From positions 62,001 to 126,000 of IMG/VR virus record IMGVR_UViG_3300037010_003311: a stretch of DNA of 64,000 bases, one strand, 5' to 3'. The notes under the pieces were generated by a model that ran no database searches, was not told where the DNA came from, and was given only the letters and a program-made list of their open reading frames with translations. The position numbers and the translations under genes are program-made. Positions 14,026-41,417 of this stretch are shown here, piece after piece. Position 1 is the stretch's first letter, and each line of letters starts with the position of its first letter.

Positions 14026-14961
14026 ATGGAAATTACAGGAATCGAAATAAACTTAGATAATATACAAGATGTTGAAATGCCAATGGTTGCTCCAGTATTA
14101 GAAATGCCAACTATGCCAATGGTAGCACCAGAGGTAGCAGAAATGCAGATGATTAAACAAGAGATTATCCAAGAAGTTGCTGCACCTACACAAGTAGTAC
14201 CAGTTGCACATAATGATACCAATATCACTATTATTGGTGAGATGAAATCTGCTTACTATGGTGGGTTTGTTAAAATCCTAGAATTCTTAAGTGACAATAT
14301 GGGTTCACAAGATGTTATCTACATTGAAGATGGTAAACTAAGTACTCTAAAAGGTTCTGGTTTTATTTATTGTGATCTAGAATCATTGTTTGGTAAAAAT
14401 AATTTTGAAATTATTGATCCAAAAAATGCAATCAAAAAACTTAAACTCTGCCGAGGTGGAGATTTAGTATCCATTATGGATGTTAAAGATGATAATAAAT
14501 ATCGTGTCGTTAGTTCATTTAAGGGTGAAGCAAACGATATCATTAATATCTTTAAACCACAAACCAAAGATAGTCAATCGGTAAAGGCTCCAACACTAGA
14601 TACTAAAAAATATAGCGTAGAGTTAGAACTTGATATCATTGCCAAATTGATTGAAGCTAAAAAAGCATATGATGCTACATACTATACTTTAGTACTTGAA
14701 AAAGATACATATCGTTTAATCAGTATTGAACTTACTGATAACTATCGCCATAACTTTTCAACTACAACTGCTGAAACAGTAAGTTATAAAGTGTTTGACC
14801 CATTTCCAATTACTAAAGCAGAAGGTATTATTTTTGAGATTTATTCAAATGATGCTGCACAAAAAGTTTATATCCAAACAATTGCTGATGTTAGTATCAC
14901 TAGCATTCGTTATACAGAAATTGCGTCCATTAAAACAGATTTCGATGCTTTCACCATCTAA
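14026..14961 (+). CDS. Probable DNA sliding clamp (T4 gp45/PCNA-like) with acidic, Pro/Met-rich N-terminal extension
   Basis: After about 75 low-complexity aa, a roughly 235-aa region whose pattern (IIDPKNAIKKLKL; KAPT...LELDIIAKLIEA) parallels gp45; clamp loader present at 55477. Confidence 0.5.
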   Translation: MEITGIEINLDNIQDVEMPMVAPVLEMPTMPMVAPEVAEMQMIKQEIIQEVAAPTQVVPVAHNDTNITIIGEMKSAYYGGFVKILEFLSDNMGSQDVIYIEDGKLSTLKGSGFIYCDLESLFGKNNFEIIDPKNAIKKLKLCRGGDLVSIMDVKDDNKYRVVSSFKGEANDIINIFKPQTKDSQSVKAPTLDTKKYSVELELDIIAKLIEAKKAYDATYYTLVLEKDTYRLISIELTDNYRHNFSTTTAETVSYKVFDPFPITKAEGIIFEIYSNDAAQKVYIQTIADVSITSIRYTEIASIKTDFDAFTI

Positions 14962-15006
14962 CTTTTAAATATTAAGATGGGATTAAATCCTAAGAGTGTA
15001 TAATCC

Positions 15007-15036
15007 AGAAGTTTAAGACTACGGTCTTAGCTTCTT
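15007..15036 (+). terminator. Hairpin with cUACGg tetraloop
   Basis: TAAGAC-TACG-GTCTTA plus outer AGAAG/CTTCT, between clamp-like and SWIM genes. Confidence 0.55.
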
Positions 15037-15064
15037 AACCATAAAAAATATTTAAAGGATTAAG

Positions 15065-15460
15065 ATGATACCAGTTTCAAAATTACTTGGCCCTATTAAG
15101 GATGAAAAAACTATGGAAATTAGGGAAACCTATGATCCAGAATGTGCTCACTATATAGTTGTGAATAAAAAATCAAATCATGGTTATAATGTAAAATTTA
15201 TTACCGATAAACCAAACAATAGTATTACCCCAACCTGTAATGTTAAGGTTTCGTGTAATTGTGATAATTTTCAATTTATGTATGCGTATGTATTATATAA
15301 AAATGATGGTTTATATAATCCCCATCGTTTAGTACTGACACCACCAGTTGAGAAAAATCCAAATATGATTATTGGAGCGTGTAAGCATGTAAAATTAGCC
15401 CTCTATAGAAAAATGACTAATAATGTACAAAAACTTGCAACTACGGATGGGGATATCTAA
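15065..15460 (+). CDS. SWIM zinc-finger protein
   Basis: VSCNCDNF...ACKHV (CxC...CxH). Confidence 0.75.
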   Translation: MIPVSKLLGPIKDEKTMEIRETYDPECAHYIVVNKKSNHGYNVKFITDKPNNSITPTCNVKVSCNCDNFQFMYAYVLYKNDGLYNPHRLVLTPPVEKNPNMIIGACKHVKLALYRKMTNNVQKLATTDGDI

Positions 15461-16782
15461 TGGCAATAAAAATAGATTTTACTGAATTTACTTTGGATCT
15501 ACCAGAAGTCAAAGATGCTTCTATTTATAAAACTGGTACTACTAATCACCAGTTTTCGGAAACCGGATTATATTCCGAACAGATTTTTGGTCCATTAAAA
15601 AATTATAAGTGTAGTTGTGGAAACGTAGTATCTAAAATAAATGCTGGTATACGGTGTGAAATATGTAATGTACTTTGTGAATCAGATAAATTACGAAATA
15701 CCCAATTTGCTAGAATAGAATTACCAAAAGGTATTTTTATTATTCTACCTACACTTATAAAAAATTTACATGATATCTTTGGACAGAATCCAATTAAAAG
15801 TATTATGGATAAAGCGCAGTATCAACATAATTGTGACAGACCTTATTATTTTTTAAATAACTTTTCTAAATTAGTAAAGATTCCAGAAAAGGATAAAGAT
15901 AAAGATAACTATCTAAAAGATTATCCAGTTTATGATATATCTTCTTTACATAGATTATTTCAATATCTTAGAGATGAGACTGATGCTTTAGATTCTAGAA
16001 TTTCAAAAAAATATCTAGATTATGTTTTTGTAGATTATGTTTTAGTGCTACCAGTTAATAGTAGACCGATTGTAAAGATTACAAATGAAAAAAGTAATGT
16101 TCATCCAATTACAGAAAAGTATGCGGAAATATTAAAAAATAAGAGCAATAGTCTTGTTGATGACTTTCATGAAATCAATGAAGAGATGTTTGGTGCAACT
16201 GTTTATAAATATCAAAATAGTGTTAATCAGTTATACGATATAATTTTGCAGAAAAACTTTCAGCAGAAAGAAAGCGTGAGTCGTGATTACATGATGGGTA
16301 AAATTATTGAACATTCCGGCCGTTTTGTTATTGTGCCAAATCCAATTCTAAAACCATATCAAATAGGTTTACAATCTCACGCTATCAAAGAGATAAATGT
16401 CCCGGAAATTAAACGATTCATTTATCAAAAATATGCTCAAAACTCAAGTGATGAAAAGATTATGGATTATCTAATAAATATAGATTCTCATAATTCATTT
16501 AGTTCAGTATTTAATATATCTGATGATTTACTAAAAGAATTTTTGGCAGAACAAGCCAAGAATTTAATTTATGTTTGTGAACGCCCACCTGTGTTATGGA
16601 AGTATAACGTTACCGCCTTTTTTCTAGGTTTAGTAAATTGGTCTGAAAAAGATGTTACTAGAGTTATGGTACCATTTACTTCAGTTGTAAAGAAAATAAT
16701 ATCTAAATTCACTAAACCAGACGCGAAGAAAATGAATTATAGAAAATCAATTAAAAGTGTTTCTGTAAATTTTGGTAAGTAG
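15460..16782 (+). CDS. rpoC: Multisubunit RNA polymerase beta' N-terminal piece
   Basis: GLYSEQIFGP, CSCG/CEIC zinc site, VLPVNSRP, MGKIIEHSGRFVI, ERPPVLW. Confidence 0.92.
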   Translation: MAIKIDFTEFTLDLPEVKDASIYKTGTTNHQFSETGLYSEQIFGPLKNYKCSCGNVVSKINAGIRCEICNVLCESDKLRNTQFARIELPKGIFIILPTLIKNLHDIFGQNPIKSIMDKAQYQHNCDRPYYFLNNFSKLVKIPEKDKDKDNYLKDYPVYDISSLHRLFQYLRDETDALDSRISKKYLDYVFVDYVLVLPVNSRPIVKITNEKSNVHPITEKYAEILKNKSNSLVDDFHEINEEMFGATVYKYQNSVNQLYDIILQKNFQQKESVSRDYMMGKIIEHSGRFVIVPNPILKPYQIGLQSHAIKEINVPEIKRFIYQKYAQNSSDEKIMDYLINIDSHNSFSSVFNISDDLLKEFLAEQAKNLIYVCERPPVLWKYNVTAFFLGLVNWSEKDVTRVMVPFTSVVKKIISKFTKPDAKKMNYRKSIKSVSVNFGK

Positions 16783-16863
16783 ATTACAATATTGTATCTA
16801 AGTAGTTAAACGGCTCCAAGAGCTAAACCAAAAACCTATAAAGGCATTAAATGGAAATTTTAA
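16690..16863 (+). pseudogene. Decayed NUMOD1/IENR1-type homing-endonuclease tail at the beta' split
   Basis: The beta'N frame reads KKIISKF...RKSIKSVSVNFGK*ITILYLSS*TAPRAKPKTYKGIKWKF*, resembling NUMOD1 (SI.EA...G....KT.KG..WK) with two internal stops. Confidence 0.5.
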
Positions 16864-18740
16864 ACAATATGGTCATGCATTTAAATAGTTTAAATGCAAA
16901 ACGCTTTAACAGTGACTATGATGGTGATGGTCTTGGGTGTTACTCTTTACATAGTACCCAAGCTAAAAAAGAAGCAAGGCGATATATGACGCCTATATCA
17001 AATATCCAACATGAACACAATCTCGAAATGGTGGATACGCTAGAGCATGAAAGTATTCAAGCGGCATACATGCTTTCGCTTAAGGGATGGAAAAATTTCG
17101 ATTCAAATAAAATCGAATTAACTTTACAAAACATAAGCGAATTCCAAGCAGATATAAATACAGTAATTAAAACTCCAAATATAGCAGTAAGGCTTATAGA
17201 TGAAGATATAGTATTACCATATAATTCTGTTCTAATTAACGCATCATTCGATATAGAAGAGTTAATATATACTGATAGTAGATTATTGTATAAAAAGAAT
17301 TTACTAGAACTGATTAAGCTTTTATACGACTTTGTAGAGAATGCTAAATTTCATGATAAATTACATAACTTCAATAAAGTACTACTTGAATGTAGTACAG
17401 TTGTTAGTTATTGTAATACAAGTTTTGAACTGAATCACTTTGCGGTGAATCATAAAGCAATTGAGGATTTCAAAAAAACACTTATAAATGAACCATTTAC
17501 TGGTTTCCATCAAAACCAAATGCTATTTGATACACATGTTAAAAATCTTATTTGTCATGATGAAGATAATATTCTAACGAATGTATTCAATTCTGGAGCA
17601 AGGATCAAAAATGTACAGTTGTTAAAAGCTGCTAGTAATAATGGTATCCCAACTGATATTAATGGTAGAGCATTTAAGCATAATATTAAAAACTCATTAC
17701 TTGATGGATTAACCGAAGAAGAGTTCTTTATGACTGGGGATAGTGCAAGACTAGCCTTAGCTCAAAGGCAAGATTCTATTCCAAAGGGTGGTGAACTTCA
17801 ACGGAAGATATATTTTACAACTGGATTCTTGCAACTCAATAATATTGCAGATTGTGGATCAGAAAAATATTTTACAATAGTGGTTAGTGATAGACATCAT
17901 TTAGCTTCCTTATATGGAAGATGGTATATTACTGATGATAATCCAAAACTACGTTTCGTTCGTTTAGATGATACTAAATTAATTGGTACGGAAATTAAAG
18001 TTCGTTCCCCAATTTATTGTAAGTCTGGTGATTATGCTATTTGTGATAGATGCTTTGGTTCTAAAAAACCAGATTCAGATAACATTGGTGCAGCTATTGG
18101 ATCATATATTGCGGAAAGTATCATTCAGTCAATTCTTAGAACTCACCACTTTAGTGGAGCTTTCATTACTGAGATTAAAAAAGAATTCAATGAAATTATT
18201 GAATCGTTACAATTCGAATCACCTAACATTATAAAAGGTAGTCCAGAAAATATTGATCGGTATAAACAATATCTTTTAGATAATTACTATAAGGAAGAAG
18301 ATTTTACTATAACCAAAACTAGTAAAAACTGCTACGAAATTGATGTTATTAATTTACCATTAAATGATGACTCTGTTAAAAAACTACAGGTTATTACTTC
18401 ATATATTGATAAGAATCGAGATAGTGATAATTTGATTTCACCAGAAGAGATATATAAATTTCTTAAAAATGAAATCATTATGCCTAATGATATTTTGAGT
18501 ATATATGTTGAATTAATTATTGGTATTCTATTTTACGATGAAGATGGTATTATGATTAGATATTCTGATAAAGAGATTAACTTCCAGTTGGCTTTAAAGA
18601 ATGTTATTTCGCATATTGATCCAAGAATGTCTTTCTTCTATGGATTCAACGATGGTAAGATTAGTGATTGTTATGATGCCGAAACCGAGGGAACGGTCCT
18701 AAAACATATGTATCAGGATTTAACTGATATCTATTATTAA
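16851..18740 (+). CDS. rpoC: Multisubunit RNA polymerase beta' C-terminal piece (catalytic)
   Basis: RFNSDYDGD (NADFDGD equivalent), bridge helix GELQRKI, DCGS, RSPIYC...CDRCFG, trigger loop IAESIIQSILRTHH. Confidence 0.95.
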   Translation: MEILNNMVMHLNSLNAKRFNSDYDGDGLGCYSLHSTQAKKEARRYMTPISNIQHEHNLEMVDTLEHESIQAAYMLSLKGWKNFDSNKIELTLQNISEFQADINTVIKTPNIAVRLIDEDIVLPYNSVLINASFDIEELIYTDSRLLYKKNLLELIKLLYDFVENAKFHDKLHNFNKVLLECSTVVSYCNTSFELNHFAVNHKAIEDFKKTLINEPFTGFHQNQMLFDTHVKNLICHDEDNILTNVFNSGARIKNVQLLKAASNNGIPTDINGRAFKHNIKNSLLDGLTEEEFFMTGDSARLALAQRQDSIPKGGELQRKIYFTTGFLQLNNIADCGSEKYFTIVVSDRHHLASLYGRWYITDDNPKLRFVRLDDTKLIGTEIKVRSPIYCKSGDYAICDRCFGSKKPDSDNIGAAIGSYIAESIIQSILRTHHFSGAFITEIKKEFNEIIESLQFESPNIIKGSPENIDRYKQYLLDNYYKEEDFTITKTSKNCYEIDVINLPLNDDSVKKLQVITSYIDKNRDSDNLISPEEIYKFLKNEIIMPNDILSIYVELIIGILFYDEDGIMIRYSDKEINFQLALKNVISHIDPRMSFFYGFNDGKISDCYDAETEGTVLKHMYQDLTDIYY

Positions 18741-18749
18741 GGGTATCTA

Positions 18750-19013
18750 ATGAATAATAATCTAGATAAAATTGCATCTAAGAACCAAACTAAACGATTG
18801 GTGCTTATTAATGGTTTAGGAGATACCGAAGTAGATTATATTTTGGAAGATGATAACATCGATAATGCAATCTATTATCTTTTATGCGCGAGGAACCATT
18901 TAATTGAACATAGTGATTTTCCATTAACCGCTTTAACTAGATTAGAGATTGCAGCAGCTGCAATCAGCCAAGCAATAATGGAAGTGGAAGCTAAAACAAT
19001 TTTCAGGACATGA
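18750..19013 (+). CDS. Hypothetical protein within RNAP cluster
   Basis: 87 aa, RBS AAGGG. Confidence 0.7.
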   Translation: MNNNLDKIASKNQTKRLVLINGLGDTEVDYILEDDNIDNAIYYLLCARNHLIEHSDFPLTALTRLEIAAAAISQAIMEVEAKTIFRT

Positions 19014-19025
19014 GGGAGATAAAGA

Positions 19026-20300
19026 ATGAATTTAATACCAACTAAAGTGAGAACCGTATCCAATTCGGAATGGTACGCTATCCCAGATTTTAGAAAGGAT
19101 GATCATTATAAAGTACTAGATATATTAAACGATATGTTTAAAAAGTTATCTAATTATTTTAACATCACTTATAAAATTGATTTTATAAATAAACTTGATG
19201 ATGATAAAACTTACTTGAGCGAGTATGCTACATATATGAACTTGATAGTAATAAATCTTGCAGTAAATGGTGTACCAGAGAAACCTATAAAAATCCGTTA
19301 TCCAGCTTTAGTGAATGATAACTTCTTTATTATGAATGGTAGTATCTATGTACCACTTATGTTTTTAGAAAGAAGTCCGATCGATAGAATAAATGAAATA
19401 GATGAAACAACTGGTAAAAATATTGGCCGTATATTATTAAATATTTTACCATCATTTAATATTACATTTGATTTCGTGAATGAACGTATTCTTTATCGTG
19501 GTAAAAAAGCTATTACGACTAATATGTTTTTTAGTCTTATTTATAATAGGCCCGAAGATCAGGAGTATGTTAAATACCTCATTGATAATGGTATTATGAC
19601 AGATTTCTTTGATTCTGTTTCGGAAGAGGATATGAAAACATTTATTAAATCCTTCGATCTTAAATCACTAAACATTTTAAAAAATGAAGAACCAATCAGC
19701 ATTGTAGATTTCTTCGATGAGTTATTATTACTTGATTACTTTAAAGGAATGTTTGAAAAAATCTATGGTGTTAGTACCATTCGGGAGATCTTAAAAATTA
19801 TAGTCAATTACTATTTGAATGATACATTTATTGATATGTCTGATCTTAGAAATAGGCGTATAGTTGTTAATGAATATCTTATTAATCCTATATTTGAATA
19901 CTATTTAAGATTCCTGAGAAATATTACGGAGAAACATGACCCAGATGCGAAAAAAGTTTTTAGTCCTACTATGAATCCACAAGTTGTTATAACTAGTGGT
20001 TTTAGAGGTATGATGCATGGTGGTTCACATTATAATATTTCATTACCATATCCAACACCATTACTTTATAAGGTGTCTCAAAGCATTTATATTGTTGGGG
20101 AAAAGGTACCAAGAAGTTGGACGAGTAATCATCCAAGTGCTTATGGTAAAATATGCCCAATTTCGGTATCTGCTCAAAACATGGGAGAAAACCTAGTATT
20201 TACTAGTGATGTTCGTTTAGATAAATATGGCCTAATAGAAGGTACTAAAGCTATTTTAGTTGAGCGACAAGAGGATGATGTAGATGCACCCAAAACTTAA
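19026..20300 (+). CDS. rpoB: Multisubunit RNA polymerase beta N-terminal piece
   Basis: FFIMNGSIYVPLMFLERSP and HPSAYGKICPI match FIINGTERV..QLHRSP and HPTHYGRICPI. Confidence 0.85.
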   Translation: MNLIPTKVRTVSNSEWYAIPDFRKDDHYKVLDILNDMFKKLSNYFNITYKIDFINKLDDDKTYLSEYATYMNLIVINLAVNGVPEKPIKIRYPALVNDNFFIMNGSIYVPLMFLERSPIDRINEIDETTGKNIGRILLNILPSFNITFDFVNERILYRGKKAITTNMFFSLIYNRPEDQEYVKYLIDNGIMTDFFDSVSEEDMKTFIKSFDLKSLNILKNEEPISIVDFFDELLLLDYFKGMFEKIYGVSTIREILKIIVNYYLNDTFIDMSDLRNRRIVVNEYLINPIFEYYLRFLRNITEKHDPDAKKVFSPTMNPQVVITSGFRGMMHGGSHYNISLPYPTPLLYKVSQSIYIVGEKVPRSWTSNHPSAYGKICPISVSAQNMGENLVFTSDVRLDKYGLIEGTKAILVERQEDDVDAPKT

Positions 20301-21165
20301 AAATATTTTAGAATTTAGTTATAAGTATAGTAATATTTATGACTGTTCTACGCCAAGTTTTGGCCCTTATGATTATCAGCTTTTAGAAAAAAAATTATCT
20401 GAAAATATGGATAACTATCGCGATGTGTATACTATGATGGCAAATACACTTTTTGGTGATGGCGAAAATATAAATATTTTAGAAGTTTTAAATTATGCTG
20501 TTATGCATAGTGCTCTCCAATATAATTTTTGGTATGGTTCTCCAGATTATAAACCATTTAATAGTGGTATAATAACCGAGTATATAATTGGAAAAGATTA
20601 CCAGAAACTAGAGGATATTATAAAAAATAGTGTTATTGGTTTTATACCAGATCGATTAGAAACCTTAAATAATTTAAGAACTTTATTGAGCAATGGTTAT
20701 TTAGAATCGCGGTTTTTCGCAAAAAATTTTAATCTCCACGATTTTATAGATTTTTTATTAGAACAAAAATGTTTTAATAATGATCCACTGTTTAAAAAAG
20801 GTATCTTAGTTATAATGGAGGTTAGACGTATACTTGACCATTGGCCAAATAAGGATGATAGTATTTATCGAAAGCTGGATAAAACTTTCGACACCGTAGA
20901 AATATCGACTTATCCAATCCCGGCCGATTACCGAATCCCGGAATACTTAGCAAGCGTCGGAGCTCAAACCGAGACTCTAAATAAATATGTAATCGAAAAT
21001 AGTATTGAAGAAATAGGCATTCGAACAACTTCAATACGTTTAATAAACGAATTACATCAAATAAGTAAACTTCCAACCTATGTCCTAGATTCATTAATCT
21101 TTATAGATCATAAAGTTAATAAATCAGAATCCAAACATCATCTTTGTATGACAACTAACTATTAA
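20284..21165 (+). CDS. Queuosine-salvage Qng1/DUF2419-like N-glycosylase/hydrolase
   Basis: ALQYNFW, DPLFKKGIL, PADYRIPEYL, EEIGIRTTSI, VLDSLIF and C-terminal HHLCMTTNY follow the order and spacing of the DUF2419 motifs (NFcFW, KRAQ, ADYrvP, EveIR, iD..lW, hHrtr..yY). Confidence 0.75.
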   Translation: MHPKLKNILEFSYKYSNIYDCSTPSFGPYDYQLLEKKLSENMDNYRDVYTMMANTLFGDGENINILEVLNYAVMHSALQYNFWYGSPDYKPFNSGIITEYIIGKDYQKLEDIIKNSVIGFIPDRLETLNNLRTLLSNGYLESRFFAKNFNLHDFIDFLLEQKCFNNDPLFKKGILVIMEVRRILDHWPNKDDSIYRKLDKTFDTVEISTYPIPADYRIPEYLASVGAQTETLNKYVIENSIEEIGIRTTSIRLINELHQISKLPTYVLDSLIFIDHKVNKSESKHHLCMTTNY

Positions 21166-21179
21166 AAAGGAAAATAATT

Positions 21180-21851
21180 ATGGAAAACACACAAGCATCA
21201 CAACAATTCACAGGAACATTTCGTTATGGTTTAGTAGCAATTTCAAAAGCTGGAAAAGAATATTTTACAGGAGTTGTAGGCTTTACTAATGCCTCAGGTG
21301 GTCAAGATCAATACAAAGTTACAAGCTTTGATAAAAATACAGTTGCTTATGCTAAACAGTATGGAGCATATAATGAAAATAAAATGGCTCTTAGTGGTAA
21401 AAATGTTACACTAACAAGTAAATCTGGTTTCGCTTTAAGTTCTTATTCTAATAAATATGAACTACTTTTTGAAACCATGGATATTGAGGGTTGCCCATTC
21501 CAAGCTCCAGCTGAAGCACCACAAGGTTATTCTGCTCCAACAATGGGTATCCAAGCTCCAACTGTAGGTATGGGATTGCCACAGCCAGGCATGATGGCCG
21601 CTCCACAAATGGCTGCTCCACAAATGGCTGGGATGGCTGCTCCACAAATGCCAGGTATGATGGCTGCTCCACAAATGCCAGGTATGATGGCTACGCCAGG
21701 TATGATGACTGCACCAGTTGAAATGCAACAACCGGCTCCTATGCAACAACCTGCGGCAATGACTGCTCCAGTTGAAATGCAACAACCTGCGGCAATGACT
21801 GCTCCAGCTGTACCAGGTATGATGCCTGCACCACAAATTCCAGGGATGTAA
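21180..21851 (+). CDS. Putative ssDNA-binding (OB-fold-like) protein with M/A/P/Q-rich repeat tail
   Basis: About 105-aa beta-rich aromatic N-domain then low-complexity tail; strong RBS. Confidence 0.45.
   Translation: MENTQASQQFTGTFRYGLVAISKAGKEYFTGVVGFTNASGGQDQYKVTSFDKNTVAYAKQYGAYNENKMALSGKNVTLTSKSGFALSSYSNKYELLFETMDIEGCPFQAPAEAPQGYSAPTMGIQAPTVGMGLPQPGMMAAPQMAAPQMAGMAAPQMPGMMAAPQMPGMMATPGMMTAPVEMQQPAPMQQPAAMTAPVEMQQPAAMTAPAVPGMMPAPQIPGM
21591..21810 (+). repeat. Coding tandem repeats (MAAPQ x4; MTAPVEMQQPA x2)
   Basis: GCTCCACAAATG repeated four times; GCACCAGTTGAAATGCAACAACC-type unit twice. Confidence 0.9.
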
Positions 21852-21863
21852 ATAACTTATTTA

Positions 21864-21893
21864 GGGGGGGGTACAGTTATTGTACCTCTTTTT
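21864..21893 (+). terminator. Intrinsic terminator
   Basis: GGGGGTACA-GTTAT-TGTACCTC stem followed by TTTTT. Confidence 0.8.
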
Positions 21894-21930
21894 ATACCTA
21901 AAAATATAAATTAAAGTTTAAAGGAAATAA

Positions 21931-23907
21931 ATGAGTATTGTTAGTCCCCAAATTGAGGTATTTGAACCATTTTCCTCTAACACTGATGCTAGTAGAACAA
22001 ACATGAGTTCAAAGCAGTTACTACAGGTTATTGTTGCTGAAGGTACCGAGATACCATACATTCTAAATAAAAACTATAAAGTTATGACGACCGTTAATTC
22101 ACCATTTGTAAAAATTGCTGAAGAAGATGGAGTAGTAATCTACAACAATAATAATCTTATTGGATATGTATATAAAGAAACAAAACGAATTACCTTTGAC
22201 CATTTACCAGATACTAAGAAAATGGTAAACAATAGCCTAACGCTGAAATATATAACCAAAGAGCCTAGATTTAAAAAGGGTGACGTCCTTTGGGATTATA
22301 CTAATCAAGATCCTGAAACGAATATGCCAAGAACTGGATATAGAGCAAACATTATGTATTCTAGCTTCTTTGGTTTTAATGCGGATGATGCAATGGTTAT
22401 ATCTGAAAGTTTTGCTGAGAGATGCCGCATAGATTATTCGGAAAAAATATTTATGCCTATAACACCGGAAATTAAATACATTATGAATGAAGGTAGGAAT
22501 AAGTATTTAACTGGACCAGATGAAATTACACCAAATAGTTTTTATATTCAATACAATAAAATCGATACATCTAAACATTTTTTAACCGAATTAATAAATG
22601 TAAATAATTCTGTTTCAAAATCAGCTAGTAAAATGGTTGAAGCGATTGCTGGTGGAAAAATTTTATCTTTAAAAATTCATAAGCTTTCAGATTTATCTTT
22701 CAATGAATTAAAAGCTAGATATGTTTATACTCCAACGTTAATTGATGAGATTGAGGTATTGTATAATGATCAAGCTGGAATTCATAAACATATTCTGGAT
22801 TCATTGCGGTTGTATATGCAAGAAGATGACGCTGAAGCTATTCATTCAAAACTGATTAAAAACTATTATTCAGTAACTGAGTTCAATGATATATTTATGA
22901 CGGATTTAGCGGATAATTATAAGATTGATAAAGACTCGATTGATATAGTTATCGAACTTGAAATTCATAAAGATCTACCAACTTGTACGGGTGATAAATT
23001 TACCAATCTATTTGCTGGTAAAGGAGTTGTCTCATTAATCATTCCTGACGAATTAATGCCGAGAGATGAAGCTAATGATCCAGCTGATATCATCTTTAAT
23101 CCACTTGGATTATTTGGTCGTAATAACTGGGGAACAGTTTTTGAAATGGCTTTAGCTAAGATAATAGAAGATGTTGAAGAAAACATTAATAATCGAACTC
23201 AAACCCTTAGACGATTAAAGTTTATTAATAAGCATTTTATTCGTCTATACGATGAAGACTACTATCATAACGTAGAACAACTTATCGAAAACTTTGATGA
23301 GCGGTTTGATGAGTTTAAACATCAAGTACAAACCAAAGGGTTTTTTCTATATGTTGAAAATTTTCCAAAAATAGCATATAATGATTTCATTAATGATTTT
23401 GTAAATCCATATGAGGCAACATTTAATGTCAATATAACTAAGAAAGAGAAAACTATCTTTTCAAAAGAGTTGATGCAATTTATGCGAGATAAAGGATTTA
23501 AAACAACTTTGTTTAACTCAGCTCAGGATATTGAACAAGATGTTTATTTTGGTCGTAATTATTATATGAAACTTTTCCATACTGCCTGGTCAAAATATAA
23601 TGCCGTTGGTTTTAGTTCAAGCTACTCACGTATAACTGGACAACCAGCACGGGGTCGTAAAAACAAAGGTGGTTTACATATCAGTTGGCAAACTTTTGCG
23701 GCATTACTTGGTTATAAAACTAAGAATGCAGTTCTAAAAGAATTCTACTCTATTAAAGCGGATGTTGCTATAGCTGATAAAAAGATTTTCATTAATAGTT
23801 TTATAAACAGTGGTGAATACATACTAAAAAACAAGTATTTCTCACAAACTAAGCAAACTTTGACTAATGCTTTGAAAATGATAGGGATGATTTTTAAGAG
23901 TGATTGA
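21931..23907 (+). CDS. rpoB: Multisubunit RNA polymerase beta C-terminal piece
   Basis: PFSSNTDASRTNMSSKQ, GFNADDAMVISES, GDKFTNLFAGKGVVS, DIIFNPLG, YMKLFH, YSRITGQP.RGR..KGG. Confidence 0.93.
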   Translation: MSIVSPQIEVFEPFSSNTDASRTNMSSKQLLQVIVAEGTEIPYILNKNYKVMTTVNSPFVKIAEEDGVVIYNNNNLIGYVYKETKRITFDHLPDTKKMVNNSLTLKYITKEPRFKKGDVLWDYTNQDPETNMPRTGYRANIMYSSFFGFNADDAMVISESFAERCRIDYSEKIFMPITPEIKYIMNEGRNKYLTGPDEITPNSFYIQYNKIDTSKHFLTELINVNNSVSKSASKMVEAIAGGKILSLKIHKLSDLSFNELKARYVYTPTLIDEIEVLYNDQAGIHKHILDSLRLYMQEDDAEAIHSKLIKNYYSVTEFNDIFMTDLADNYKIDKDSIDIVIELEIHKDLPTCTGDKFTNLFAGKGVVSLIIPDELMPRDEANDPADIIFNPLGLFGRNNWGTVFEMALAKIIEDVEENINNRTQTLRRLKFINKHFIRLYDEDYYHNVEQLIENFDERFDEFKHQVQTKGFFLYVENFPKIAYNDFINDFVNPYEATFNVNITKKEKTIFSKELMQFMRDKGFKTTLFNSAQDIEQDVYFGRNYYMKLFHTAWSKYNAVGFSSSYSRITGQPARGRKNKGGLHISWQTFAALLGYKTKNAVLKEFYSIKADVAIADKKIFINSFINSGEYILKNKYFSQTKQTLTNALKMIGMIFKSD

Positions 23908-25039
23908 TTTAACTGGGTTGAAATTGTTATACCCCGAAGCTGAACCGCGGCAAATTAAAGCCGCGGTTAAATACCAAGAAAAATTTTCTTTAACTTTGGA
24001 AAATTTAAAATGCTTAAACCCAGATTGTAACAGAATGCGAAAATGGGGAGATACAGTTTCTGGTTTTTATTACACTTGCTCAAAAGAATGTTTTAATAAA
24101 ACTAAATCGATTAGAGAAAATAAAAAGTTAGAAGCCAGAATCAAAACTAGTTTATCAAAATATGGAATTAAGAATGCGGCCAGTTTACAAACTATTAAAG
24201 AACTTAAAATCAAAAATAGTAGATTAAATTATAATTGTGATAGTCCAAATACCCTAGAATCTAAAATTTTAAAAACTAAAAAAACTTGTATTGATAAATA
24301 TGGTACAAGTTGTACGGCTCAGAGAATAGAAATTAAAACGATCATTATGAAAAATAATGTTAAACATAATGTTGACTTTTCGGCTCAACGGCATATTACT
24401 AATTTAAAATATTGGGGGAATAAAAACTTTTGGATTGATAATTTTATAACAAACGATAATCATTTTGATTATATAAAATGTATGTTATATTTTAATTGTA
24501 AACAACCAACTGTTCATAATCAAATTAAAAAACTTGGTATAAAATATACCAAGACCGCAGCAACTAGTTTACAAGAACAAGCTATAATACCATATTTAGA
24601 AAGCTTAGGTGTATCGGCGGTAGCAAATGAACGGGCCATAATACCAAATCAGGAACTAGATATTTGGATACCTAGCTTAAAACTTGCAATAGAATGGAAT
24701 GGTAGCTATTGGCATAGTTATCATGAAACCATAGGGACAGGACCTAAGCAGCTAGATTATGACTTTTGTAAGTACCGGCACCAACGAAAGGCTTTAGCCT
24801 GCTTGGAGGTGGGTATTCGGTTGCTTCAGTTATATGAAGATATGAACTTAAGCAATTGGAAAGAGCAAATAGATAAATTTATAGTTTATGATCCAGACAC
24901 TGGGATAGATATATATGACTTGGATTCTGGTTGCTATCCACTTAACCCAGATTTCGAAACACTAGAACCCGAAAGCCGAATGGTGCTCAAAAACCGCACT
25001 TTATGGAACGCAGGTAAAATTAAAATTAAAAGGAAATAA
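23900..25039 (+). mobile_element. Free-standing Hef-like (PD-(D/E)xK-type) homing endonuclease gene
   Basis: ELDIWIPSLKLAIEWNGSYWHS; shares WxNKNFWI...C..YF.C.Q.T.H.Q.KKL.I with 58525-59928; overlaps the rpoB C-piece stop. Confidence 0.75.
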
Positions 25040-25041
25040 AA

Positions 25042-26319
25042 ATGCAAGATATATTTGATACAAAAAATGAAATATATGCTATGAAACGTAAAGCTCTGGG
25101 TGGAGCAATTAACCAGCTTTTCAATACTGCTAAAACAGATAGTAAAATTGTAGGGCCTTTAGTAAAGTTAGTCGCACCACTTGGTTTAAATCTTTCGGTA
25201 TACGAGGATGAAGATCCAACTAAAACACTTTGGGAAAACATTGCTAAAAACCCATCGCTCAAGAATCTAAATAAGGTTATGAAAGATCTTCCATTAATCA
25301 ATGTTGTTAAAATTGGTAATATTATTTCTGAACTTTTAGTTGGTAAAAGAGATGCTACTAAAGCATTAGCCAATCGTACAGTTGCAGTAAACTACTTTAT
25401 TGCTGCAGTTACTGAGTTAAATGAATACTTCGCAGCTATTGGGGTTGATTATATTTTACCATTGCCGAATTTAACTAAGCGATATAAACGCCCAGTTGGT
25501 GTGGATGAAGCAATACGTGTAAAACCAAAAAGGAAAAAGAAAAGCTTACTTGGTGAAGCAGTACCAAATGATACAGTTACTTTAGAAACTACAATTGATC
25601 CGATTGTTGAAGCTAACCCAGAAGTTGTTATCCCAAAAATTAGTAGTCGCAACAGGGTTACAAATAATAAAAAACGTGAGCCGATAACTATAAAACAAAA
25701 AGTTCAAGTTGAAAAAATAAATATAGACCCAGTAATGGTTATCACAGATGAACCTTTACCAGAGATAGTGAAAGAAGAGACTATTTCGAAATCTATAGAT
25801 AATGGTAAGATAATAGAGGAACCACAAAGCAATAGAATTATTTTATTGAATTCATTTTTAGTTGGTAAAAAAGAGACTGGTGAACCAGCTAGAACAATGA
25901 GTTCATTAGCTAAAAAATGTGAATCAGATGAAGAGTTCTTTAATAAAATTACGACAACCAGTTACCGTAAACATATTACTAAAAAGTTCTTTGATTTACA
26001 TAAAGATTTATTTTTATCTTATAACCCAAATTCCGAGGAAATAATCTTTAGGAAATCTAAGAAAGATAAAACTGAATCAAAGGAAATGATTCATCCAAAT
26101 CAGGGTAGTTTTGAATTTGAACCAGATGATGAAACCAAAAAAATGATCGATCAATTGAAACCATTAAATGCTGAATATATGGCACCATTAGTAAATAAGG
26201 TAAGAGGAACCTATGATTTATTATATATAATAGATGACTACCCATTCATCATAGAAGAACCAGTAACCTTTAAAGAAAAAGTAAAAACTGTTTTTTCTAA
26301 AATTTTTAGATTAAAGTAG
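25042..26319 (+). CDS. Hypothetical protein
   Basis: 425 aa, RBS AAAGGA. Confidence 0.8.
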   Translation: MQDIFDTKNEIYAMKRKALGGAINQLFNTAKTDSKIVGPLVKLVAPLGLNLSVYEDEDPTKTLWENIAKNPSLKNLNKVMKDLPLINVVKIGNIISELLVGKRDATKALANRTVAVNYFIAAVTELNEYFAAIGVDYILPLPNLTKRYKRPVGVDEAIRVKPKRKKKSLLGEAVPNDTVTLETTIDPIVEANPEVVIPKISSRNRVTNNKKREPITIKQKVQVEKINIDPVMVITDEPLPEIVKEETISKSIDNGKIIEEPQSNRIILLNSFLVGKKETGEPARTMSSLAKKCESDEEFFNKITTTSYRKHITKKFFDLHKDLFLSYNPNSEEIIFRKSKKDKTESKEMIHPNQGSFEFEPDDETKKMIDQLKPLNAEYMAPLVNKVRGTYDLLYIIDDYPFIIEEPVTFKEKVKTVFSKIFRLK

Positions 26320-26923: not shown

Positions 26924-28168
26924 ATGGTACTTTCGCAGGATAATATAAAAACATTTTCATGCCATCTTAAAACAATGGGGGCTTATGTTCAGCAGCCTAA
27001 CCCAGCAATTGTTGGGTTAAGTGATTTCCAGGTTATTGGTAGTCAGGATGCAAGATCGCTATATCCAACGATTATGATTTTATGCAACATTGGTTACGAA
27101 ACATTATATGCAAGATTGTATGATACAAATATTGTTGGTAAGATGATTGGTTATATAAAACATTCATTTAACGACAAAAAGAACGTTGACCCAGCAGTGG
27201 CAGGTTTCAAGAATGCTTTACAGATATTAGTGAAAAACTATACAAACCGTAACGATATCCTAAAGAAAAAAGAATTCCAAGAGTTTACAGTTGATTATTA
27301 TTGTAAACTTTTTAAAACGATAATTTCATATCCTGGAAAAATAGAAGATATTTTTTCTCCCAAAGATGATGAAACATACTTTCTATTAAAGAGCTGCCTA
27401 TTTCCAATACTGGAAGCTATTACTTGGCTTCATGAAAATAATCGTGGTTATAATGCAACTTGTATTGATTGGGTATTTTATAATTCTGGATTTGCGAATA
27501 AATACAAGGGGCAAACATTTTATGTCTTTGAACATATAAATTCGGTTAAAACTAAGTTAGTTGAATATAGTATAGATACCATCAGTAGTTTATTAAATAC
27601 ATATCTGGTTAACCCATACGGTACTCTGTTTTATAGACACAATGATAAAAAATCATTCGAGGTTGATCTAATTATCAAAGGTATGGGTGACCGCGGTTTT
27701 ATTAAAGATCAAGGGTTGATTCTAAAAGCGATTAAATCTAAATGGAATTCTGTACCAGAATCATTAAAACGTGGTTTAAGTATTGCTGGCCATATAGATG
27801 AAACGGTTGCTAATGACCTAGTTAGTTTGGTTGGTGACTCGGATGAAAAAATGAGAGTTAAGCAACTTAATAACTTATTGTCTATTATTATGGGTACAGA
27901 TGGTATTAATGATTTAGATATTCTAGCCAAAAAAATTGAAGTAATTATCTCACAGAAAAACAATGCTAGTAATGGGGTTAAAACAACTTTGAATACCGGA
28001 TATGGTATATATGCTATGACTATTTGGGAATATGGAAATGCACTTATTGCAAACAGTATTACCAACGCTGGTAAGATTTATGGTATTAAGTTATTCCAGC
28101 AGATAGCGAGTAACATATTAACTGAAGAGCAGAACAACATTTCAAAAACGGTTGGCAATGTTGCGTAG
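26924..28168 (+). CDS. Family B DNA polymerase, central fragment (motifs A and B only)
   Basis: GAYV..P...SQDARSLYPTIM..NIGYET (motif A) and KTTLNTGYG...NSITNAG (motif B); no exonuclease domain and no YGDTDS motif C. Confidence 0.88.
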   Translation: MVLSQDNIKTFSCHLKTMGAYVQQPNPAIVGLSDFQVIGSQDARSLYPTIMILCNIGYETLYARLYDTNIVGKMIGYIKHSFNDKKNVDPAVAGFKNALQILVKNYTNRNDILKKKEFQEFTVDYYCKLFKTIISYPGKIEDIFSPKDDETYFLLKSCLFPILEAITWLHENNRGYNATCIDWVFYNSGFANKYKGQTFYVFEHINSVKTKLVEYSIDTISSLLNTYLVNPYGTLFYRHNDKKSFEVDLIIKGMGDRGFIKDQGLILKAIKSKWNSVPESLKRGLSIAGHIDETVANDLVSLVGDSDEKMRVKQLNNLLSIIMGTDGINDLDILAKKIEVIISQKNNASNGVKTTLNTGYGIYAMTIWEYGNALIANSITNAGKIYGIKLFQQIASNILTEEQNNISKTVGNVA

Positions 28169-38733: not shown

Positions 38734-38743
38734 CTTTTACCCT

Positions 38744-39121
38744 TTAAAATTTAAGATATTGTTTTTTCCAAAAGGCCCAAAATTCTTTGTTTAATTCTAC
38801 TTCTGTATAATCGGTATCGAATATAACTTTTAACCAGATAGTACTTTTTTTACTCTCTTTAGTTAAATCTTCGGAGATTACTAAAATTCGATCTTGATTT
38901 ATAATAAGATTTGGGCCAAGTTTTATATACTTGTTTAATTTTTCATTTTTTAATGTTTCTAATAGTTTATCCGGTGTTATTTCAATTTTTAATTTTTTAA
39001 CTTTAATAATATTTCTAAATGTTATAAAAACTTCATTTTCTTTAATTTCGAAGAATGAAATATTATTTAAAAAAATATATTTACTTGAACCATCAACTTC
39101 GGTAACTTTTAATTGTTTCAT
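38744..39121 (-). CDS. Hypothetical basic protein, two internal beta-rich repeats (LytTR/FlbD-like?)
   Basis: Two KYI..L/N..I...I units; weak resemblance only. Confidence 0.6.
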   Translation of the reverse strand: MKQLKVTEVDGSSKYIFLNNISFFEIKENEVFITFRNIIKVKKLKIEITPDKLLETLKNEKLNKYIKLGPNLIINQDRILVISEDLTKESKKSTIWLKVIFDTDYTEVELNKEFWAFWKKQYLKF

Positions 39122-39151
39122 TGAACATTCCTTTTTAATATTTTAGTTTAT

Positions 39152-39679: not shown

Positions 39680-39701
39680 TATTTACCTTTCTTTTTTCGC
39701 A

Positions 39702-41403: not shown

Positions 41404-41417
41404 TAAAAACCTTTTTA

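What the first reader, a model, noticed from the sequence alone, without database searches (positions are those of the whole stretch)
15065..23907. Four-piece phiKZ/AR9-type RNA polymerase in a genome with T4-type clamp, loader, portal and baseplate
Seen: beta'N, beta'C, betaN and betaC are clustered, with beta' cut just before the catalytic loop. The active-site motif is NSDYDGD and beta GDKMAGRHGNKG appears as GDKFTNLFAGKG (both lysines kept, RH lost). A SWIM gene is translationally coupled to beta'N. Established (from memory): this split position matches the phiKZ non-virion RNAP. Inference: a divergent jumbo lineage combining this transcription system with T4-like replication and morphogenesis parts, probably infecting Campylobacterota.
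Basis: partly seen in the sequence, partly recalled or inferred. Interest (0 to 1): 0.6.

Follow-up and report, generated by a model that had tools for sequence, protein, structure and literature searches.

The report
Phage RNA polymerase split four ways
An uncultivated giant phage from microbial mats and sediments encodes its own multisubunit RNA polymerase in four pieces, and one cut lies inside the catalytic barrel at a site not reported for known phage or cellular enzymes, probably made by a selfish homing-endonuclease gene.

Summary
Window 15065-23907 encodes a SWIM-type zinc protein, beta'N (440 aa), beta'C (629 aa, NSDYDGD at residues 21-27), betaN (424 aa) and betaC (658 aa, GDKFTNLFAGKG). 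BetaN is confirmed by a fold match. The beta' junction is identical in contigs from other samples. Natural variants are 32 synonymous to 6 non-synonymous.

The beta cut matches the AR9 non-virion polymerase. The beta' cut does not: in phiKZ and AR9 the catalytic loop lies in the N-terminal piece, whereas here the cut is 21 residues before the first catalytic aspartate.

More than 120 metagenomic relatives (41-73% identity) carry beta' either fused (about 1020-1080 aa) or cut at exactly this residue. In six related loci, homing-endonuclease genes sit in the gap. AR9 has an HNH intron inside the same motif.

The likeliest account is a working non-virion-like core with a lineage-specific beta' fission driven by a homing endonuclease.

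No second polymerase set is in this 81%-complete record, but near-complete relatives have one. T4-type portal, clamp and clamp loader are supported. The host is unresolved. T4-like phages with multisubunit polymerases are already published; this split site appears undescribed.

The parts
14026..14961 (+). Sliding clamp (gp45/PCNA fold), 311 aa. A conserved neighbour upstream of the RNAP genes.
   Evidence: ESM Atlas structure matches to PCNA and gp45 clamp clusters, TM 0.58-0.69. Homologues lie upstream of SWIM-beta' in L006, L007, L008, L012, L014, L024-L026, L032 and L033. No Pfam or PHROG hit.
15065..15460 (+). SWIM-type zinc-finger protein, 131 aa. Its stop overlaps the beta'N start (TAATG).
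   Evidence: C64, C66, C106 and H108 are invariant in 17 homologues. A homologue is found upstream of beta' in 17 of the 19 related loci examined. Model pLDDT 89. The best wide structural matches are ZSWIM8 (Z 4.0) and Shu2 (Z 3.6). In the nearest Atlas clusters, 12-18% of members carry Pfam SWIM. The protein itself has no Pfam hit. Junction sequence.
15460..16782 (+). beta'N, 440 aa. Residues 1 to about 399 are homologous to the N-terminal 400 residues of fused relatives (zinc-binding CxC..CxxC, first part of the double-psi barrel up to ERPPVLWKYN). Residues 400-440 form a lineage-specific tail.
   Evidence: Pfam Rpb1_1 and Rpb1_2. PDB hits are bacterial beta' (E 2e-11). BLASTP to fused relatives aligns residues 1-392/399 with 1-395/402. 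Tails are not conserved between clades. Variants are 9 synonymous to 1 non-synonymous.
16783..16850 (.). 68-nt spacer between the beta' halves, with AAAGG 6 nt before the beta'C ATG.
   Evidence: Sequence. No Rfam family. Folding is no better than shuffles, z -0.66. Identical in independent contigs.
16851..18740 (+). beta'C, 629 aa. It begins 21 residues before the first catalytic Asp (NSDYDGD at residues 21-27).
   Evidence: Best PDB hits are AR9 7s00_D (5e-16) and phiKZ gp74 7ogp_D (1e-12). PHROG 3015, E 3e-33. Every complete split homologue has the first catalytic Asp at residue 22; two with shorter called starts have it at 14 or 16. Variants are 13 synonymous to 3 non-synonymous.
18750..19013 (+). 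87-aa ORF of unknown function.
   Evidence: Only a weak homologue in L006 (36%). No family hits.
19026..20300 (+). betaN, 424 aa (N-terminal half of beta, ending after HPSAYGKICPISVSAQ).
   Evidence: AF2 model with pLDDT 86, pTM 0.88. Foldseek matches bacterial beta chains at E 1e-14, probability 1.0. The profile hits only AR9 non-virion betaN. 60 homologues of 390-480 aa.
20284..21165 (+). 293-aa ORF of unknown function, inserted between the beta halves. Found only in the closest relatives.
   Evidence: 41% identity to an ORF in L006 only. Faint Pfam AGOG hit, E 0.048. No PHROG hit.
21180..21851 (+). 223-aa ORF with a conserved N-domain of about 130 aa and a Pro/Gln/Met-rich low-complexity tail.
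   Evidence: Translation. The N-domain is conserved between betaN and betaC in L006, L015, L027, L029-L031 and L034. No family hit.
21931..23907 (+). betaC, 658 aa (second double-psi barrel with GDKFTNLFAGKG, plus the C-terminal part).
   Evidence: Pfam Rpb2_6, E 1.8e-23. PDB beta hits at 7e-17. Aligns with AR9 non-virion betaC from residue 9 to residue 22. 120 listed homologues of 650-860 aa, none fused to betaN.
23900..25039 (+). Free-standing homing endonuclease gene, 379 aa. Its GTG start overlaps the end of betaC.
   Evidence: PHROG 3339 homing endonuclease, E 8e-36. At least six paralogues in the genome. Homologues lie between beta'N and beta'C in six related loci.

Best explanation
The cluster encodes the catalytic core of a phage multisubunit RNA polymerase of the jumbo-phage non-virion (AR9/phiKZ nvRNAP-like) kind, made as four separately translated polypeptides.

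Beta is cut at the site shared with the AR9 non-virion enzyme, and it is cut in every relative found. Beta' carries a different, lineage-specific cut inside the catalytic double-psi barrel, 21 residues before the first Mg-binding aspartate. The two halves must therefore rebuild the active-site barrel non-covalently (inferred).

The beta' cut most likely arose when a free-standing homing-endonuclease gene inserted into the highly conserved DNA that encodes the catalytic loop. The upstream half then read into the insert as far as a stop codon, giving a non-homologous tail. The downstream half acquired its own ribosome-binding site and ATG. In this genome the endonuclease gene has since been lost from the gap, leaving 68 nt and a 41-residue tail.

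A conserved SWIM-type zinc protein is co-translated with beta'N and is a candidate accessory subunit (inferred, not shown). The enzyme probably transcribes middle or late genes of a genome that appears to carry 7-deazaguanine-modified DNA (inferred).
For: Four pieces and their identities.

Catalytic residues are kept, and the motif form is clade-wide.

The junction is real in independent samples. Selection is purifying: 32 synonymous to 6 non-synonymous variants. Halves are conserved at 41-73% identity in more than 60 protein clusters.

The beta cut equals that of AR9 nvRNAP.

The beta' cut differs from AR9 and phiKZ (PMC7598289 and PMC7824862).

Fused and split alleles coexist in one clade, and every complete split form starts at the same residue. 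The state needs 1-2 changes on the trees.

beta'N tails are non-homologous between clades.

PHROG 3339-type endonuclease genes abut beta'N and/or beta'C in L015, L027, L029, L030, L031 and L035. The same family sits next to betaC here and has at least six copies in the genome.

AR9 carries a group I intron with an HNH endonuclease inside the same catalytic motif, which shows this DNA is a homing hot spot.

No intron or other RNA family was found, and the spacer is not unusually structured. AAAGG lies before the beta'C ATG.
Against: - No protein or activity data exist. No RNA run holds the sequence.
- With the distant outgroups available, this genome's split clade branches at the base. The split could therefore be ancestral to the clade and the fused forms secondary. 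The direction of change is unresolved.
- In this window no endonuclease gene lies in the beta' gap, so the insertion origin rests on relatives.
- betaC and beta'N score better against bacterial subunits than against phage ones. 'nvRNAP-like' therefore rests on beta'C, betaN and the beta cut site.
- No homologue of the fifth nvRNAP subunit (gp68/gp226) was found.
Confidence: 0.7

Rival explanations
1. The beta' cut is the ancestral phiKZ/AR9 cut, inherited with the rest of the enzyme.
For: beta'C has almost the same length as AR9 gp154 (629 against 631 aa) and hits it best. The beta cut is shared.
Against: AR9 beta'N contains the catalytic SGDYDG, and Pfam Rpb1_2 positions 91-154 lie in that ORF. 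Reviews place the phiKZ/AR9 split after the barrel. Here the motif is in beta'C. The roughly 40-residue offset in the alignment to 7s00_D and 7ogp_D fits this. About half of the clade has a fused beta'.
Confidence: 0.04
2. The split state is ancestral to this whole clade, and the roughly 1020-1080-aa beta' genes are secondary re-fusions, for example by gene conversion from an uninterrupted allele or by precise loss of the insert.
For: In the outgroup-rooted IQ-TREE tree, this genome's split clade forms the basal grade and the fused clade is nested. All complete split forms share one boundary. Well-supported branches do not force more than one change.
Against: The outgroups sit on very long branches (3.7 and 6.4 substitutions per site), so the root is unreliable. 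One split form (P0034) nests inside the fused clade. Tails differ between split clades. All more distant RNAPs are uninterrupted at this site.
Confidence: 0.3
3. The interrupted beta' is a decaying or inactive gene, or an assembly or sequencing artefact.
For: There is a stop codon, a frame change and a non-homologous tail in the middle of an essential catalytic domain.
Against: The junction is identical in contigs from other samples and studies. The same architecture occurs in more than 60 clusters at 41-73% identity with an intact Asp triad. Variants are 22 synonymous to 4 non-synonymous in the two halves. The second half has its own Shine-Dalgarno-like AAAGG.
Confidence: 0.03
4. The two halves are rejoined into one beta' by an intron, a split intein, or translational bypassing or frameshifting.
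For: AR9 has a self-splicing intron at nearly the same place. Phage genes interrupted at catalytic sites often carry introns or inteins.
Against: The gap is 68 nt here and 8 nt in L006. No Rfam intron was found, and there is no unusual structure. beta'C starts directly with sequence homologous to fused forms, so there is no C-intein. The 41-aa tail is too short and too variable for an N-intein. In relatives the halves lie up to 3 kb apart with other genes between them.
Confidence: 0.03
5. This set is the only RNAP of the phage. It is either packaged in the virion or made from host-transcribed early genes, and it transcribes all later classes, so there is no phiKZ-like two-enzyme scheme.
For: Only one set is found in 226.6 kb by Pfam and by a profile of the relatives' second beta. 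No sigma-70 region 2 was found. Two classes of promoter-like motifs exist.
Against: The record is linear and estimated 81% complete. Relatives at 97% and 100% completeness carry a second, divergent beta-like gene plus beta'-like pieces elsewhere.
Confidence: 0.35

Closest known systems
Non-virion multisubunit RNAPs of Bacillus phage AR9/PBS1 and Pseudomonas phage phiKZ (PDB 7S00, 7OGP)
   Same: - Made only of beta and beta' homologues, in pieces.
- Beta is cut at the same place: betaC residue 9 aligns with AR9 residue 22, and the proteins are 658 and 665 aa.
- They give the best PDB sequence matches for beta'C and the only match for betaN.
- No sigma-70 region 2 in the genome.
- Relatives also have a second set.
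   Different: - The beta' cut lies before the catalytic loop, not after the barrel.
- Beta' is unsplit in half the clade.
- The genes are clustered in one operon-like block instead of scattered.
- No gp68/gp226 homologue was found.
- Identity is only 22-28%.
- The genome has a T4-type portal and a gp23-like capsid protein rather than a phiKZ-type head.
mReC, multisubunit-RNAP-encoding Caudovirales (Weinheimer & Aylward 2020, PMC7481178). A later paper notes that multi-subunit RNAP is prevalent among Straboviridae (PMC11835377).
   Same: - Uncultivated large phages with gp23-type capsid and T4-like structural genes plus beta and beta' genes.
- Some mReC contigs carry QueC.
- Metagenomic habitats overlap.
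   Different: - mReC was defined by unsplit subunits of at least 800 aa. The table lists beta at 920-1563 aa and beta' at 900-1370 aa, usually as adjacent genes.
- Here beta is always in two genes, and the order is beta', betaN, betaC.
- None of the IMG metagenome ids of the relatives occur in the held part of the mReC tables.
- The second, unsplit roughly 1020-1050-aa beta of relatives G001-G003 resembles mReC sizes. This was not tested further.
Naturally split beta' of cyanobacteria and chloroplasts (gamma/beta') and of archaea (A'/A'')
   Same: A large RNAP subunit is made as two polypeptides that assemble into one functional unit.
   Different: Those cuts lie after the barrel (cyanobacteria, the same site as phiKZ according to PMC7598289) or further downstream (archaea). 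None is reported inside the barrel before the Asp triad.
Group I intron with HNH endonuclease in the AR9 beta'N gene
   Same: A mobile endonuclease element is inserted in the DNA that encodes the catalytic Asp motif of beta'.
   Different: In AR9 the element is annotated as an intron (joined CDS), so one polypeptide results. Here there is no intron, and two proteins are made.
'Genes in pieces' made by free-standing homing endonucleases in T4-like phages (for example the NrdA split by mobE in Aeromonas phage Aeh1; recalled from the literature, not checked here)
   Same: An essential enzyme gene is cut by an inserted endonuclease gene into two ORFs that both stay conserved, with uninterrupted alleles in relatives.
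   Different: The target here is the RNAP catalytic barrel. In this window the endonuclease gene has left the gap.

Membership tests
Jumbo-phage non-virion msRNAP (phiKZ/AR9 type) | Beta homologue in two polypeptides cut at the nvRNAP-specific site | tested here: met
   betaN ends after HPSAYGKICPISVSAQ, and betaC starts just before PFSSNTDASRTNM. betaC residue 9 aligns with residue 22 of AR9 non-virion betaC. The phiKZ 7ogp_C motif offset is about 30 residues.
Jumbo-phage non-virion msRNAP (phiKZ/AR9 type) | Beta' cut after the double-psi barrel, with the catalytic Asp triad in the N-terminal piece | tested here: not met
   The triad is at residues 22-26 of beta'C. In AR9 it lies in exon 1 of beta'N. 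The literature agrees.
Jumbo-phage non-virion msRNAP (phiKZ/AR9 type) | Closest sequence affinity to nvRNAP subunits | tested here: inconclusive
   Met for beta'C (7s00_D 5e-16, 7ogp_D 1e-12) and betaN (only hit 7s00_c, E 0.035). Not met for beta'N and betaC, which score better against cellular subunits. No joint phylogeny was made.
Jumbo-phage non-virion msRNAP (phiKZ/AR9 type) | Phage-specific fifth subunit (phiKZ gp68 / AR9 gp226) | tested here: inconclusive
   Only two neighbouring ORFs, 14026-14961 and 25042-26319, were tested against PDB sequences. Neither matches gp68 or gp226. The rest of the genome was not searched, and these subunits diverge fast.
Jumbo-phage non-virion msRNAP (phiKZ/AR9 type) | Accompanied by a second (virion) RNAP set in the same genome | tested here: not met
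   One set only in the 226.6-kb, 81%-complete record. Relatives G001-G004 have a second beta-like gene and weak beta'-like pieces, so absence here may reflect incompleteness.
Jumbo-phage non-virion msRNAP (phiKZ/AR9 type) | No sigma, alpha or omega homologues | tested here: inconclusive
   No Sigma70_r2 match at E<=10. Alpha and omega were not searched.
mReC (Weinheimer & Aylward 2020) | Unsplit beta and beta' of at least 800 aa with NADxDGD | tested here: not met
   beta' is 440+629 aa and beta is 424+658 aa. All 120 listed betaC homologues are 650-860 aa and separate from betaN. mReC sizes are.
mReC (Weinheimer & Aylward 2020) | gp23-type major capsid protein (PF07068) | tested here: inconclusive
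   22.2 bits against a cut-off of 24.4, at G000 149351-149704. PHROG 20655 major head protein, E 3e-8.
T4-like (Pantevenvirales-like) phage | T4-type portal, sliding clamp, clamp loader | tested here: met
   Portal_T4 at 30.6 bits, above the cut-off, at window 61519-62379. Clamp fold for 14026-14961. Clamp loader PHROG 168, E 5e-34, at 55477-56475.
T4-like (Pantevenvirales-like) phage | gp25-type baseplate wedge protein | tested here: not met
   No PF04965 match at E<=1 in the record. The large minus-strand ORFs at 36487-49503 have no structural family hit beyond one tail-fibre PHROG.
SWIM zinc finger (PF04434) | CxCxnCxH zinc ligands and the Pfam threshold | tested here: inconclusive
   The ligands are invariant, but there is no Pfam hit at E<=0.1. 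In the nearest Atlas clusters, 12-18% of members carry SWIM. Structural matches to ZSWIM8 and Shu2 reach only Z 4.0 and 3.6.
Gene split by a free-standing homing endonuclease ('genes in pieces') | Endonuclease gene between the halves, uninterrupted alleles in relatives, and both halves conserved | tested here: inconclusive
   Met in relatives: L015, L027, L029-L031 and L035 have endonuclease genes in the gap, about 50 clusters have fused alleles, and both halves are conserved. In this window the gap holds only 68 nt and no endonuclease gene. Cleavage specificity cannot be tested here.

The most novel reading that the evidence does not exclude
This genome represents a large, uncharacterised clade of T4-like jumbo phages with three linked features:
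- Its nvRNAP-like enzyme tolerates a break inside the catalytic double-psi barrel. This break is a living record of homing endonucleases fragmenting RNAP genes, the process once proposed to explain the phiKZ/AR9 splits.
- The conserved SWIM protein, encoded next to a sliding-clamp gene, is a new accessory or specificity subunit.
- The enzyme is adapted to a genome in which guanine is replaced through the nucleotide pool by a 7-deazaguanine.
Probability: 0.2. Interest if true: 0.8.

Novelty: new variant of a known kind. Interest (0 to 1): 0.62.

Why it matters
Multisubunit RNAPs are among the most conserved enzymes known, and how far their catalytic core can be fragmented is an open structural question. 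Three points follow from this locus.

- It shows a natural, selected break inside the barrel that holds the Mg-binding aspartates. Fused and split alleles sit side by side in one clade, which makes a ready-made comparison for assembly and activity studies.

- Several relatives still carry the endonuclease gene in the gap. This gives direct comparative support for the idea that mobile endonucleases created the split RNAP genes of giant phages.

- It links an nvRNAP-like enzyme to a T4-type head and replication module. Relatives carry two RNAP sets. Both facts bear on whether the two-polymerase strategy is older than the Chimalliviridae and AR9 lineages.

Tried and rejected
- Complex prediction of the SWIM protein with beta'N gave no answer (score 0.00, controls not run). 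It is evidence neither for nor against binding.
- A Foldseek search of the SWIM model against the PDB found nothing at E<=0.001.
- A single-protein search of IMG/VR with beta'C found nothing. An alignment-based search was needed and returned 13 loci.
- No DNA-level match in INPHARED phages.
- No relatives in the GTDB representative genomes, so there is no prophage or binning clue to the host.
- The betaN profile found nothing in the AR9 or phiKZ records by six-frame search.
- The mReC supplementary tables do not list the metagenome ids of the relatives. The largest table is truncated, so membership could not be settled by name.
- 'Moraphages' (PMC12619734) were considered as a possible description of this clade and rejected, because they lack RNAP genes.
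- Split intein, intron, recoding, pseudogene and assembly error were considered and rejected (see the rival explanations).
- Sigma-70-type promoter scanning of the cluster gave fewer sites than shuffled sequence (61 against 78) and was not used.
- A deep phylogeny joining this clade with phiKZ/AR9 virion and non-virion sets and with bacteria was not attempted. Branches are very long, and most reference sequences were not at hand.
- Host assignment by CRISPR spacers could not be done with these tools.

Full report
**Source and context**

The window is bases 62001-126000 of a 226,657-bp linear IMG/VR virus record, estimated 81% complete. It has 32% G+C, uses the standard code and is about 93% coding. 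No phage in the INPHARED collection matches the cluster at the DNA level. At the protein level the best cultured matches are 22-28% identical. These are AR9/PBS1-like Bacillus and Staphylococcus jumbo phages, phiKZ-like phages, and phages with an unsplit beta' such as Rhizobium phage RHph_TM30 (1127 aa) and Vibrio phage Va2 (1192 aa). The same DNA occurs in microbial mat, sediment and, in part, hydrothermal vent metagenomes.

**The observation**

On the + strand lie eleven ORFs:

| Coordinates | Product |
|---|---|
| 14026-14961 | 311-aa ORF |
| 15065-15460 | 131-aa ORF |
| 15460-16782 | beta'N, 440 aa |
| 16851-18740 | beta'C, 629 aa |
| 18750-19013 | 87-aa ORF |
| 19026-20300 | betaN, 424 aa |
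| 20284-21165 | 293-aa ORF |
| 21180-21851 | 223-aa ORF |
| 21931-23907 | betaC, 658 aa |
| 23900-25039 | 379-aa ORF |
| 25042-26319 | 425-aa ORF |

- beta'N hits Pfam Rpb1_1 and Rpb1_2 weakly. beta'C hits the end of Rpb1_2. betaC hits Rpb2_6 at E 1.8e-23. PHROG RNAP families match all three.
- NSDYDGD is at residues 21-27 of beta'C, and GDKFTNLFAGKG is in betaC.
- A six-frame Pfam search places Rpb1_2 positions 1-121 in beta'N and 114-164 in beta'C. The cut is therefore inside the catalytic double-psi barrel.
- betaN has no family hit. Its C-terminus (HPSAYGKICPISVSAQ) aligns with the HPSHYGRxCPIETPEG region of bacterial beta.
- A 47-sequence profile of betaN hits only the AR9 non-virion betaN chain (E 0.035).
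- An AlphaFold2 model of betaN (pLDDT 86, pTM 0.88) matches bacterial beta chains at E 1e-14, probability 1.0.

All four pieces are therefore real.

The 131-aa ORF ends in TAA overlapping the beta'N ATG (TAATG). AAAGG lies 6 nt before the beta'C ATG.

**Not an artefact, not a pseudogene**

- Contigs from other samples and studies cover 15623-17068 and 16759-17280 without a single difference or indel. They bridge the stop, the 68-nt spacer and the restart.
- Thirty-eight listed variants across the SWIM gene, beta'N, beta'C and betaN split 32 synonymous to 6 non-synonymous.
- Rfam finds nothing in 14900-25200, and the spacer folds no better than shuffled sequence.
- beta'C begins directly with sequence homologous to uninterrupted relatives, so there is no C-intein.

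**Relatives**

A word-index search with beta'C returned 146 clusters. The 120 listed are 40-73% identical apart from the window's own protein, and some lie on contigs of 260-315 kb.

- About 50 are 1020-1080 aa, and beta'N plus beta'C align end to end with them. beta'N residues 1-392/399 match positions 1-395/402, and beta'C residue 3 matches position 404/405.
- About 63 are 630-680 aa. Every complete one has the first catalytic Asp at residue 22; two with shorter called starts have it at 14 or 16.
- After the homologous core, the split beta'N proteins carry tails of 15-80 residues that are not alike between clades.
- betaC homologues are 650-860 aa and betaN homologues 390-480 aa. None is fused, so beta is split throughout.
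- Gene order is conserved: clamp, SWIM, beta'..., betaN..., betaC. QueC-type genes, RecJ and an AAA+ clamp-loader gene lie nearby.
- betaN and betaC are adjacent in L028 and separated by 0.2-3.5 kb elsewhere.

**Trees**

FastTree on 115 sequences and IQ-TREE (LG+C20, quick search) on 54 sequences both give three lineages:

- this genome's clade, all split;
- a large clade of fused forms, with one split form (P0034) nested inside it;
- a large split clade.

The state needs two changes on either tree, and well-supported branches force only one. With the only outgroups at hand, which sit on very long branches, this genome's clade is basal. Whether fused forms are ancestral or secondary within the clade is therefore open. 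Outside the clade, every RNAP examined is uninterrupted at this position.

**Comparison with phiKZ and AR9**

The AR9 non-virion betaC (665 aa) aligns with betaC from its residue 22 to our residue 9. The phiKZ betaC chain shows a similar register. The beta cut is therefore shared.

- The AR9 non-virion beta'N gene holds Rpb1_2 positions 1-40 and 91-154.
- Its first exon ends ...SALSGDYDG.
- Two reviews state that the phiKZ/AR9 beta' cut follows the barrel and coincides with the cyanobacterial one (PMC7598289, PMC7824862).

The AR9 gene is annotated as joined, with an HNH endonuclease gene in the intervening sequence, and the interruption falls inside the catalytic motif. The same stretch of DNA is thus a target of mobile endonucleases in a distant phage.

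**Origin of the beta' cut**

The ORF overlapping the end of betaC is a PHROG 3339 homing endonuclease (E 8e-36). The genome has at least six paralogues. In six related loci (L015, L027, L029, L030, L031, L035), one or two genes of this family lie between beta'N and beta'C, abutting or overlapping the end of beta'N and/or the start of beta'C.

Four things fit an insertion of a free-standing endonuclease gene that split the gene, followed here by loss of the insert:

- fused alleles in relatives;
- a fixed boundary in all split forms;
- non-homologous read-through tails;
- the AR9 precedent.

This is inference. Cleavage specificity was not testable.

**Accessory genes**

- *SWIM protein.* The 131-aa protein has invariant CxC...CxH residues and a homologue upstream of beta' in 17 of the 19 related loci examined. 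Its model is confident (pLDDT 89). It has no Foldseek match in the PDB. The two best wide structural matches are SWIM-domain proteins at low Z. Atlas neighbours are viral clusters in which some members carry Pfam SWIM. Its role as an RNAP partner is suggested only by linkage and translational coupling.
- *Sliding clamp.* The 311-aa ORF upstream has a sliding-clamp fold and is also conserved next to the RNAP genes.
- *Other ORFs.* The 223-aa ORF has a conserved N-domain found between betaN and betaC in several clades. The 87- and 293-aa ORFs occur only in the closest relative.
- *Fifth subunit.* The two neighbouring ORFs tested, 14026-14961 and 25042-26319, do not match gp68 or gp226.

**A second polymerase**

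Pfam models find one set in this record. Four IMG/VR relatives of the large split clade were examined: G001, G002, G003 and G004. G001 is 97% complete and G002 is 100% complete.

- Each has a second Rpb2_6 gene elsewhere, in open frames of 1031-1048 aa (1601 aa in G004). It carries GSKFTLAATGGKG and matches bacterial beta at E 1e-31.
- Only Rpb2_6 positions 2-289 are covered.
- G001 and G004 also have weak second Rpb1_2 hits, and G002 has a beta'C-like 311-aa ORF.
- In G002 this region is flanked by endonuclease genes.
- A profile of this second beta finds only betaC in the present genome.

The wider clade therefore has a two-set scheme. Its absence here may reflect the missing 19%.

**Other context**

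- T4-type portal, clamp loader, rIIA, RNase H, RecJ and ribonucleotide reductase, and a weak gp23-like capsid protein support a T4-like chassis.
- gp25 and the gp45 N-domain were not found by Pfam.
- No sigma-70 region 2 and no TGT/DpdA were found.

**Literature**

- mReC phages (PMC7481178) have unsplit, adjacent beta and beta' genes, a gp23 capsid and sometimes QueC.
- A 2025 survey notes multisubunit RNAP in Chimalliviridae and Straboviridae (PMC11835377). A 2026 review repeats this.
- I found no description of a beta' cut before the catalytic loop, or of fused/split polymorphism with endonucleases in the gap. The search covers open-access papers only.

**Verdict**

The locus is a genuine, selected, four-piece nvRNAP-like core. 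It is a new variant of a known kind. It is of moderate to high interest for RNAP structure and for the evolution of phage transcription.

Noticed in passing
window 14026-14961: The 311-aa ORF directly upstream of the SWIM and beta' genes has a sliding-clamp (gp45/PCNA) fold. It keeps this position next to the RNAP genes across the clade, which recalls clamp-activated late transcription in T4. This is a lead only.
   Followed up: partly
window 9444-10064, 28835-30271, 49531-50241, 50253-53617, 54647-55480, 57594-58391: QueD-like, Gat-QueC-like, a phosphoribosyltransferase next to ribonucleotide reductase, a MazG-like pyrophosphohydrolase and a dNMP kinase are present. No TGT/DpdA is found in the record. 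This suggests 7-deazaguanine DNA made through the nucleotide pool rather than by base exchange. Relatives also carry QueC genes beside the RNAP genes.
   Followed up: partly
G000 110-225 kb, minus strand (for example window 48039, 48053, 58499, 59953): A hairpin followed by TTTCCTGTCG(C) occurs 17 times, nearly all in intergenic DNA. AAACAAAT occurs 16 times, all on the minus strand and mostly 32-106 nt before start codons in the structural arm. It contains the AACA of the AR9 late-promoter consensus as I recall it. Pairs of the hairpin motif flank endonuclease genes (G000 120499/121953 and 135096/136768).
   Followed up: partly
window 8123, 13063, 54620, 56520, 58433, 61189 and elsewhere in G000: TATAGAAATA recurs in intergenic DNA, often about 37-60 nt upstream of start codons on both arms, including upstream of RNase H at the head of the RNAP block. 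It is a second promoter-like class, reminiscent of the T4 late TATAAATA.
   Followed up: no
G000 55.9-57.4, 85.9-87.0, 120.5-121.9, 135.1-136.7, 146.3-148.8, 182.6-183.8 kb: There are at least six copies of one homing-endonuclease family (PHROG 3339/559 type), so the genome is rich in these elements.
   Followed up: partly
relatives G001 218-231 kb, G002 10-26 kb (L038, L039), G003 52.7 kb, G004 123-130 kb: A second, more bacterial-like beta homologue is present, in open frames of 1031-1048 aa (1601 aa in G004). It covers only Rpb2_6 positions 2-289. G001 and G004 also have weak second Rpb1_2 hits, and G002 has a beta'C-like 311-aa ORF. In G002 the region is flanked by Endonuclease_7 and DUF723/T5orf172 genes. 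It is a likely virion-type set.
   Followed up: partly
window 21180-21851: A 223-aa protein with a conserved N-domain of about 130 aa and a long Pro/Gln/Met-rich tail. The domain recurs between betaN and betaC in several clades. Function unknown.
   Followed up: no
window 21866-21892: GGTACAgttatTGTACC followed by TCTTTTTAT is a terminator-like hairpin between the 223-aa ORF and betaC. The consensus scan did not list it.
   Followed up: no
relatives P0003, P0049, P0050, P0066, P0104, P0117: In some split relatives the catalytic loop reads D-H-D-G-D instead of D-Y/F-D-G-D.
   Followed up: no
window 26924-28168: A 414-aa ORF matches only the middle of family-B DNA polymerase profiles (PHROG 262 positions 382-550; Pfam DNA_pol_B 16 bits) and is conserved at the same size in L006. 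It is either a very divergent polymerase or one in pieces.
   Followed up: no
window 3961-8022: A 1353-aa protein whose first roughly 165 residues match rIIA. The remainder is unassigned.
   Followed up: no
relative G002 (IMG/VR, 281,455 bp): IMG/VR classes this 100%-complete jumbo-phage record as a provirus. This is unexpected for this kind of phage and may be a misclassification.
   Followed up: no
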